A stretch of 63,671 nucleotides of DNA, counting the filler, from Octopus bimaculoides (Eukaryota), in assembly GCF_001194135.2 (NCBI RefSeq). It is 7 parts of 7 records of this genome, joined end to end, with 100 filler letters (N's around TTAATTAATTAA, not from the genome) between each part and the next. Parts side by side here need not be neighbours in the genome. Positions count along the whole stretch, not along the records: positions 23,942 to 41,774 come from NW_026345656.1; 6 more parts are not named here. One strand, given 5' to 3'. Below are positions 26,022 to 26,138 of this stretch, one piece after another; position 1 is the first letter of the stretch, and every line of letters starts with the position of its first letter. A program made the translations under genes and the position numbers. The notes beneath the pieces were generated by a model. The model saw only the letters and a list, made by a program, of their open reading frames with translations. It was not told the DNA's origin and made no database searches.

Positions 26022-26138
26022 CTTGCCAAGCACGTGAGGTTTCCAGCATATTTCCAGTATCCTTAGTATCGTACTCAAGGTTCGGTTCCATGTCTGACTT
26101 TATTCTGCTAAGACCTTCTTTGTACCATTCCAACATAT
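26022..26138 (-). CDS. Candidate 117-nt exon (D)MLEWYKEGLSRIKSDMEPNLEYDTKDTGNMLETSRAWQ(G); Pax6 PST-region cassette or an exon of a neighbouring gene
   Basis: Strong acceptor tctatttctccatcttcacactgatttcttcag. Only one frame is open, and it is the phase-1 frame left by the exon ending at 34771. Symmetric phase 1-1. Coding-like island in AT-rich flanks. The donor CAAG/gtcata is weak. Confidence 0.5.

What the first reader, a model, noticed from the sequence alone, without database searches (positions are those of the whole stretch)
26022..26138. 117-nt in-frame exon that could add 39 acidic/charged residues to the Pax6 transactivation domain
Seen: strong acceptor, a single open frame equal to the phase-1 frame of the preceding Pax6 exon (...SCMLP-DMLEWYKEG...SRAWQ-G), symmetric phases. 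Established: squid Pax6 diversifies by alternative splicing with additional exons (Yoshida, Yura and Ogura 2014); I recall one being about 40 aa in the PST region but cannot verify this. Inference: an octopus counterpart of a coleoid-specific Pax6 exon. The peptide is unlike bilaterian Pax6 PST sequence. Alternative: first coding exon of a separate gene starting at ATG 26136.
Basis: partly seen in the sequence, partly recalled or inferred. Interest (0 to 1): 0.7.

Follow-up and report, generated by a model that had tools for sequence, protein, structure and literature searches.

The report
Octopus copy of squid Pax6 exon 6
This 117-base segment is a real coding exon of the octopus Pax6 gene, matching the extra "exon 6" that squids splice into the activation domain, and public gene models already include it, so it is correct but not new.

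Summary
On the minus strand, 26022-26138 is a 117-nt segment with a pyrimidine-rich acceptor, a GT donor, one open frame and phase 1 at both ends. It lies 8.6 kb downstream of the Pax6 PST exon that ends ...SSYSCMLP at 34771.

Those features alone are not beyond chance. The same intron holds 328 open AG..GT segments in that phase.

Homology decides it. The peptide DMLEWYKEGLSRIKSDMEPNLEYDTKDTGNMLETSRAWQ aligns with the 40-aa exon 6 of Idiosepius paradoxus Pax-6 (AB716346/7). It sits at the same insertion point and phase, with 25 of 40 residues identical (z = 23.7; no shuffle out of 20,000 came close).

The window is Octopus bimaculoides scaffold LGKD02050781.1. RefSeq models XP_014777067.1 (Pax-6 isoform X1) and XP_014777068.1 already splice this exon between the PST exon and the next Pax6 exon.

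Octopus sinensis keeps the exon with one synonymous change, identical splice sites and perfectly conserved flanks.

The rival (a separate gene starting at the ATG) reflects a truncated O. sinensis contig.

Still open: whether octopus skips the exon, and what the peptide does. The modest new point is that the exon predates the octopus-squid split.

The parts
26022..26138 (-). 117-nt Pax6 exon, orthologue of squid Pax-6 exon 6. It encodes (D)MLEWYKEGLSRIKSDMEPNLEYDTKDTGNMLETSRAWQ and is phase 1 at both ends.
   Evidence: Sequence. Only one frame is open. 25 of 40 residues are identical to Idiosepius exon 6, z = 23.7. It is present in XP_014777067.1 and XP_014777068.1. It differs from O. sinensis at 1 of 117 nt, a synonymous change.
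26139..26200 (-). Acceptor AG (26139-26140), polypyrimidine tract, and 62 nt of upstream intron that are identical in O. sinensis.
   Evidence: ctatttctccatcttcacactgatttcttcag; 76% pyrimidine; ungapped identical run of 62 nt.
25984..26021 (-). Weak donor GTCATA (26016-26021) and 38 nt of downstream intron that are identical in O. sinensis.
34771..34871 (-). Upstream Pax6 PST exon, 101 nt, encoding GMPTVPNYSLSNNITGNPACLQSNASSYSCMLP. Its donor is G|GTATGT and it ends in phase 1.
   Evidence: tblastn gives 97% identity to Idiosepius Pax-6.
35637..35672 (-). 36-nt Pax6 microexon encoding (R)DLKGWDVGTSLG, with acceptor tattgcag and donor GG|gtaagt.
   Evidence: It is part of XP_014777067.1.
38992..39035 (-). 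Visible 3' end of the Pax6 exon that encodes homeodomain helix 3 and the start of the PST region (...PTINQPLASMAESY + AG). Its 5' part is lost in the assembly gap 39036-39490.
41266..41348 (-). 83-nt Pax6 homeodomain exon encoding [28 protein letters not shown].

Best explanation
The segment is a genuine internal coding exon of the Octopus bimaculoides Pax6 gene. It is the orthologue of the coleoid 'exon 6' first found in squid Pax-6 cDNAs.

When the exon is spliced in, it inserts 39 residues into the C-terminal proline/serine/threonine-rich (PST) transactivation domain. The insert has net charge -4, is poor in P, S and T, and is predicted to be partly helical. It sits exactly between the conserved SSYSCMLP motif and the DYVSGTARSYDPL motif, and the reading frame is unchanged.

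Shown here:
- the exon's position, phase and splice dinucleotides;
- its homology to the squid exon;
- its near-perfect conservation between two Octopus species, including the flanking intron;
- its inclusion in RefSeq Pax-6 models.

Inferred:
- As in squid, it is a regulated cassette rather than a constitutive exon. The weak GTCATA donor and the unusually conserved flanks fit that.
- The two conserved ends of the peptide, DMLEWYKEGL[ST]R[IL]KSD and GN..E[ST]SRAWQ, form a docking surface that changes which cofactors the PST domain recruits or how strongly it activates.
For: Same place and phase as in squid. Idiosepius variants AB716346/7 read ...SSYSCMLP DMLEWYKEGLTRLKSDSELSAEQESGDLLGNLMESSRAWQ DYVSGTARSYDPL.... 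The octopus exon follows the exon that ends SSYSCMLP+G and itself ends in G.

Peptide homology. 25 of 40 residues are identical, BLOSUM62 score 132, against a shuffle mean of 22.4 and a maximum of 55 in 20,000 shuffles, z = 23.7. Identity is 14/16 at the N-terminal end, 3/13 in the middle and 8/11 at the C-terminal end.

Public gene models. An exhaustive HMMER search of 1.84 billion proteins found one true relative cluster. It contains XP_014777068.1 and XP_014777067.1 (O. bimaculoides; the latter is named Pax-6 isoform X1) and XP_029656791.1 (O. sinensis Pax-6-like). All three contain the peptide, followed by DYVSG; X1 and the O. sinensis model run on to ...YWPRLQ, while X2 ends by reading through the exon 7 donor. 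The window piece is identical to LGKD02050781.1. Exons 7 and 8 lie 4.2 and 5.3 kb further downstream, outside the piece.

Selection. Against O. sinensis the exon has 1 difference in 117 nt, a synonymous GGT to GGG. Both splice sites are identical. There are 62 nt upstream and 38 nt downstream of perfect identity, in introns that are otherwise about 86-88% identical. The corresponding runs are 3 and 13 nt for exon 7 and 5 and 16 nt for exon 8.

Composition. Exon GC is 0.42, like the other Pax6 exons (0.42-0.52), against 0.13 in the 300 nt downstream.

Structure. AlphaFold2 on the single sequence predicts helices at residues 2-16 (pLDDT about 90 over the first 10 residues) and 24-37.

Squid precedent. 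Exon 6 forms are expressed in eyeball, optic lobe and embryos, and the authors propose that the exon alters PST transactivation.
Against: No transcript evidence could be examined here. I cannot tell whether the RefSeq models rest on octopus RNA-seq or on alignment of the Idiosepius proteins.

Both O. bimaculoides RefSeq isoforms include the exon and none skips it. Alternative use in octopus is therefore unproven.

The functional reading (a docking helix) rests on a single-sequence structure prediction. The hydrophobic moment of the N-terminal segment is not significant (8-9% of shuffles reach it). There is no Pfam or PDB match.

Conservation at the exon ends could reflect splicing enhancers rather than protein function.
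Confidence: 0.85

Rival explanations
1. The exon is real and belongs to Pax6, but in octopus it is constitutive. It would always be included, so it adds no isoform diversity there.
For: Both RefSeq isoforms of LOC106874021 contain it, and no skipped form is in the protein collection.
Against: The donor GTCATA is very weak, and the flanking intron is far better conserved than around exons 7 and 8. Both are typical of regulated cassettes. In two squids the orthologous exon is absent from the major ('authentic') form. The octopus gene models are partial and few.
Confidence: 0.2
2. It is the first coding exon of a separate gene that starts at ATG 26136.
For: O. sinensis model XP_029656791.1 starts with MLEWYKEG... 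at this ATG.
Against: That contig ends 3.65 kb upstream of the exon, whereas the upstream Pax6 exon lies 8.6 kb away in O. bimaculoides. The model is therefore truncated by the assembly. Even that model continues into Pax6 exons 7 and 8. In squid cDNAs the peptide is internal to Pax-6. The conserved AG acceptor and pyrimidine tract directly abut the exon.
Confidence: 0.02
3. It is a chance open frame or a decayed, unused relic inside a long intron.
For: Open AG..GT segments in the right phase are common in this intron: 328 were found. The donor is weak. A decayed partial copy of the exon exists 0.9 kb upstream.
Against: 62% amino-acid identity to squid after a very old split, with exact boundary conservation. 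One synonymous change in 117 nt between two Octopus species, inside introns that are 12-14% diverged. The decayed copy shows what neutral decay looks like here: the AG is lost and there are in-frame stops.
Confidence: 0.03

Closest known systems
Exon 6 of squid Pax-6 (Idiosepius paradoxus variants 2 and 3, AB716346/AB716347; also Loligo bleekeri), Yoshida, Yura and Ogura 2014, PMC3942700
   Same: It is in the same gene, at the same insertion point in the PST domain (between SSYSCMLP and DYVSGTAR), and in the same phase. The size is nearly the same (117 vs 120 nt). 25 of 40 residues are identical, and both ends of the peptide match exactly.
   Different: It is one codon shorter, and the acidic middle has diverged (3 of 13 identical). 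Alternative inclusion and eye/optic-lobe expression were shown in squid and are untested in octopus. The paper called the insert 'specific to squid'; the octopus copy shows it is older than the octopus-squid split.
RefSeq gene models for LOC106874021 (XP_014777067.1 Pax-6 isoform X1, XP_014777068.1) and O. sinensis XP_029656791.1
   Same: They contain exactly this exon, spliced to the same neighbouring exons. The O. bimaculoides models come from the same scaffold as the window.
   Different: These are computed, partial models. They are 5'-truncated by an assembly gap or a contig end. One is labelled 'uncharacterized protein', and none is linked to the squid exon 6 literature.
Vertebrate PAX6(5a), alternative exon 5a
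   Same: It is a lineage-specific, in-frame cassette exon that diversifies Pax6 without gene duplication.
   Different: Exon 5a adds 14 residues inside the paired domain and changes DNA-site choice. The coleoid exon adds 39-40 residues in the C-terminal activation domain, has an independent origin and has no sequence similarity to 5a.

Membership tests
Coleoid Pax-6 exon 6 cassette (Yoshida et al. 2014) | Lies in the Pax6 gene, in the intron between the PST exon ending SSYSCMLP and the exon beginning (D)YVSGTAR | tested here: met
   The PST exon is at 34771-34871. Exon 7 is 4.2 kb downstream on the same scaffold (L002 27171-27299). The window is identical to L002 7235-25067.
Coleoid Pax-6 exon 6 cassette (Yoshida et al. 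2014) | About 120 nt, in frame, with the same phase at both ends so that inclusion or skipping keeps the frame | tested here: met
   117 nt, phase 1 at both ends, only one open frame.
Coleoid Pax-6 exon 6 cassette (Yoshida et al. 2014) | Peptide homologous to DMLEWYKEGLTRLKSDSELSAEQESGDLLGNLMESSRAWQ | tested here: met
   25 of 40 identical, one gap, z = 23.7, 0 of 20,000 shuffles within reach. The squid sequence comes from Navet et al. 2017 S1 Table and S1 Alignment.
Coleoid Pax-6 exon 6 cassette (Yoshida et al. 2014) | Alternatively included: transcripts exist with and without it | not testable with these tools
   No octopus transcript reads are available. Both RefSeq isoforms include it. The weak donor and conserved flanks are indirect support only.
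Coleoid Pax-6 exon 6 cassette (Yoshida et al. 2014) | Expressed in eye, optic lobe and embryo | not testable with these tools
   Shown only for Idiosepius.
Coleoid Pax-6 exon 6 cassette (Yoshida et al. 2014) | Absent from non-cephalopod molluscs | tested here: inconclusive
   Oyster-like read-through ORFs P0010-P0012 show an intron at the same position of only about 150 nt, with no similar peptide. Aplysia and Batillaria Pax6 go straight from ...CMLP/NNI to EY..R.YDPL. Yoshida et al. report the same for pearl oyster. Nautilus could not be examined.
Pax6 (paired box 6) gene, 3' half | Paired-type homeodomain exon, the SSYSCMLP motif and a C-terminal ...[14 protein letters not shown]...YWPRLQ tail on one strand in order | tested here: met
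   The homeodomain helix 3 exon is hidden by the N gap 39036-39490.

The most novel reading that the evidence does not exclude
Exon 6 is a coleoid-wide, tissue-regulated cassette that arose de novo inside an ancient molluscan intron. That intron is about 150 nt in oysters and more than 12 kb in octopus. The two conserved ends of the peptide would form a new cofactor-docking module that re-tunes Pax6 transactivation in the coleoid eye and brain. The decayed partial duplicate 0.9 kb upstream would be a trace of how the exon was built or copied.
Probability: 0.3. Interest if true: 0.5.

Novelty: already known. Interest (0 to 1): 0.3.

Why it matters
Pax6 is the textbook eye-and-brain control gene, and coleoid cephalopods evolved camera eyes independently of vertebrates.

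Yoshida et al. argued that squids diversify Pax6 by adding lineage-specific exons. They had no octopus data and called the exon 6 insert squid-specific.

The exon is present in octopus, intact and under strong purifying selection. That dates it to before the octopus-squid split and makes it a shared coleoid character. A comparative test becomes possible: is inclusion regulated the same way in octopus eye and optic lobe?

The gain is modest. The squid exon was published in 2014, and the octopus exon is already in RefSeq models.

A practical by-product concerns the published remark that O. bimaculoides Pax6 lacks a homeodomain. The cause is fragmentation of the draft assembly. The only model then detected covered just the paired domain on another scaffold. 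On this scaffold a gap hides the helix 3 exon.

Tried and rejected
Word-indexed protein search. The PST exon plus candidate peptide as query returned nothing, although XP_014777068.1 contains the whole query. I treat this as a gap in the index and not as evidence of absence. The exhaustive search found the protein.

Exact look-ups. The 75-aa read-through ORF and P0002 are not on record.

P0001. This 2489-aa protein scored E = 7e-25. It carries about 20 Tudor-like repeats, each scoring at most 9.3 bits against the octopus peptide and at most 4.4 bits against the squid peptide. I rejected it as a summed chance similarity.

Searches with no hit:
- Pfam and PDB sequences for the peptides;
- Rfam and tRNA scans of the piece;
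- a full-text search for the peptide string;
- searches for any paper describing an octopus Pax6 exon 6.

Amphipathic-helix test. The hydrophobic moment of residues 1-16 is higher than average, but 8-9% of shuffles reach it, so it is not significant.

Transposon origin. The exon does not overlap any interspersed repeat in the window or in the two fetched loci.

Exon 7 inside the piece. It is not there; it lies beyond the piece's edge.

Third word-indexed protein search. I did not use it, because it would have fetched the same candidates.

Full report
**What is in the sequence**

The gene runs on the minus strand. The piece (23942-41774) holds four ordinary Pax6 exons.
- An 83-nt homeodomain exon lies at 41266-41348 and encodes [28 protein letters not shown].
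- The last 44 nt of the next exon lie at 38992-39035 (...PTINQPLASMAESY). Its 5' part, which must encode homeodomain helix 3, is lost in the N gap 39036-39490.
- A 36-nt microexon lies at 35637-35672 and encodes (R)DLKGWDVGTSLG.
- A 101-nt PST exon lies at 34771-34871. It encodes GMPTVPNYSLSNNITGNPACLQSNASSYSCMLP and ends in phase 1 at the donor G|GTATGT.

The candidate lies 8.6 kb further downstream at 26022-26138. Its context is ...cacactgatttcttcag|ATATGTTGG...GCTTGGCAAG|gtcatatttt. It is 117 nt, only one frame is open, and it is phase 1 at both ends. With the G left over from the PST exon it reads D-MLEWYKEGLSRIKSDMEPNLEYDTKDTGNMLETSRAWQ and leaves a G for the next codon. The acceptor is good (76% pyrimidine upstream). 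The donor GTCATA is weak.

**Is it more than chance?**

The splice and frame features alone are not. In the 10.8 kb of intron held in the piece I counted 328 AG..GT segments of 60-250 nt that are a multiple of three and open in phase 1. Of these, 118 are at least as long as this one. The composition does stand out: GC is 0.42, like the other Pax6 exons, against 0.13 in the 300 nt downstream.

**The decisive comparison**

Yoshida, Yura and Ogura 2014 (PMC3942700) describe a 120-nt, 40-aa 'exon 6' inserted in the PST domain of Pax-6. They found it in Idiosepius paradoxus (variants 2 and 3) and in Loligo bleekeri. It is expressed in eyeball, optic lobe and embryos and was not found in pearl oyster.

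The sequence is not in that paper's text. It is in the supplementary table and alignment of Navet et al. 2017 (PMC5333810). AB716346 and AB716347 read ...SSYSCMLP DMLEWYKEGLTRLKSDSELSAEQESGDLLGNLMESSRAWQ DYVSGTARSYDPLSLSNYSR...SQYWPRLQ.

Aligned with the octopus peptide, 25 of 40 positions are identical with one gap. The BLOSUM62 score is 132, against a shuffle mean of 22.4 and a maximum of 55 in 20,000 shuffles (z = 23.7). The first ten and last five residues are identical. The insertion point is the same and so is the phase. In both animals the flanking codon is a split G|AY aspartate. Identity is 14/16 at the N-terminal end, 3/13 in the acidic middle and 8/11 at the C-terminal end.

**It is already in public gene models**

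I ran an exhaustive HMMER search of 1.84 billion representative proteins with the 38-residue peptide. It found one true hit, P0002. This is XP_014777068.1, 'uncharacterized protein LOC106874021 isoform X2 [Octopus bimaculoides]'.

Its cluster mates are:
- XP_014777067.1, 'paired box protein Pax-6 isoform X1', 171 aa;
- XP_029656791.1, 'paired box protein Pax-6-like [Octopus sinensis]', 119 aa.

Isoform X1 reads MAESYR-DLKGWDVGTSLG-GMPTV...SCMLP-DMLEWYK...SRAWQ-DYVSGTARSYDPLTLSNYSR...[41 protein letters not shown]. That is exactly the exon chain I mapped, plus two downstream exons.

Fetching the encoding contigs showed that the window piece is identical, base for base, to O. bimaculoides LGKD02050781.1 (L002 7235-25067). 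Exons 7 and 8 lie at L002 27171-27299 and 28287-28402, beyond the piece's edge.

The O. bimaculoides models start at MAESY only because of the assembly gap. The O. sinensis model starts at the exon's own ATG only because its contig ends 3.65 kb upstream of the exon. Even that model continues into Pax6 exons 7 and 8.

**Evidence of selection**

Between O. bimaculoides and O. sinensis the exon differs at 1 of 117 nt, a synonymous GGT to GGG. Both splice sites, including the weak GTCATA donor, are identical. The flanking intron is perfectly identical for 62 nt upstream and 38 nt downstream.

The surrounding intron is about 86-88% identical. The corresponding perfect runs next to exons 7 and 8 are 3 and 13 nt, and 5 and 16 nt. 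Exon 7 itself carries 7 synonymous differences in 131 nt.

Strong conservation of flanking intron plus a weak splice site is the usual signature of a regulated alternative exon. That rule is established knowledge, and here it rests on only three exons, so I treat it as suggestive.

A decayed copy of the acceptor and the first 43 nt of the exon lies 0.9 kb upstream (window 27013-27070). It is present in both species, with the AG mutated to GG and with in-frame stops. It shows what an unselected copy looks like here.

**The host intron is old and the exon is not**

Unnamed oyster-like ORFs in the protein collection (P0010-P0012) read through a roughly 150-nt intron placed exactly after SSYSCMIP. 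They contain nothing like the cassette. Gastropod Pax6 proteins go straight on to EY..R.YDPLSLS. This agrees with Yoshida's statement for pearl oyster. Nautilus could not be examined.

**How it probably works**

Shown: inclusion keeps the frame and inserts 39 residues between two conserved PST-domain motifs. The insert has 9 acidic and 5 basic residues and only 7 P, S or T.

Inferred: the two conserved ends carry the function and the acidic middle is a spacer.
- AlphaFold2 on the single sequence predicts a helix over residues 2-16 (pLDDT about 90 for the first ten) and a weaker helix over 24-37.
- DMLEWYKEGL is an acidic and aromatic stretch of the kind found in activation motifs. That resemblance is recalled and was not tested.
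- The hydrophobic moment is not significant, and there is no Pfam or PDB match.

My best reading is a regulated cassette that changes cofactor recruitment by the Pax6 activation domain, as Yoshida et al. proposed for squid. Conservation of the exon ends could instead reflect exonic splicing signals.

**What remains open**

I could not inspect transcript evidence. Both RefSeq isoforms include the exon. Isoform X2 differs only by reading through the exon 7 donor. So alternative use in octopus is unproven, and the models might lean on alignment of the Idiosepius proteins. I found no paper that describes the octopus exon.

**Verdict**

The exon is an orthologue of a published squid exon and is already part of RefSeq Pax-6 models for this locus, so it is not a discovery. 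The modest increment is the explicit orthology. It shows the exon predates the octopus-squid split, whereas the original paper called the insert specific to squid. The analysis also gives the conservation pattern of the peptide and of its flanks.

Noticed in passing
window 35637-35672 (-): A 36-nt Pax6 microexon encodes (R)DLKGWDVGTSLG and has good splice sites. The 12-residue segment is present in squid 'authentic' Pax-6 (RDLKGWDVASGLG). It is absent from oyster, Aplysia, Batillaria and other lophotrochozoan Pax6, so it looks like a second cephalopod-specific exon, this one included in the main form.
   Followed up: partly
window 39036-39490 (N gap) and 38992-39035 (-): The assembly gap removes the 5' part of the exon that must encode homeodomain helix 3 (VWFSNRRAKWRREEK...). 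Navet et al. 2017 remarked that O. bimaculoides Pax6 lacks a homeodomain. That reflects fragmentation of the draft assembly. Their only model was a paired-domain fragment on another scaffold. On this scaffold the RefSeq model starts only at MAESY because of the gap.
   Followed up: partly
window 27013-27070 (-); also L001 2442-2510: A decayed copy of the cassette exon's acceptor region plus its first 43 nt (48 of 62 nt identical in O. bimaculoides; 58 of 73 for the O. sinensis copy). The AG is changed to GG and there are in-frame stops. It lies 0.9 kb upstream of the real exon in O. bimaculoides and about 1.1 kb in O. sinensis.
   Followed up: partly
window 26276-26863 (-): A cluster of a degenerate repeat of roughly 45 nt containing TCTCTRTARA lies in the 725 nt upstream of the cassette exon. 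Six or seven of the 18 matches in the window fall here, against 6.8 expected in the whole window. They could be a decayed minisatellite or pyrimidine-rich binding sites for a splicing factor. This was not tested.
   Followed up: partly
window 28741-28845, 33017-33121, 41000-41112: Three copies of an interspersed repeat of about 105 nt (75-90% identical, one of them inverted), probably a short interspersed element. None overlaps an exon.
   Followed up: no
window 25255-25349 and 25376-25470: Two tandem copies of a 95-nt unit (82% identical) in the intron downstream of the cassette exon.
   Followed up: no
L002 27275-27343 (outside the window): The odd C-terminus of RefSeq isoform X2 (XP_014777068.1), ...ASTGNWHSMAGGGFLYFM, is simply a read-through of the exon 7 donor (intron retention). 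This is why that isoform is labelled 'uncharacterized protein'.
   Followed up: yes
tool behaviour, versus 39 and 50: The word-indexed protein search returned no candidate for a 74-aa query, although P0002 contains 72 consecutive residues of it (all but the first and last). The squid Pax-6 proteins known from UniProt never appeared in any search either. Null results from that index should not be read as absence.
   Followed up: partly
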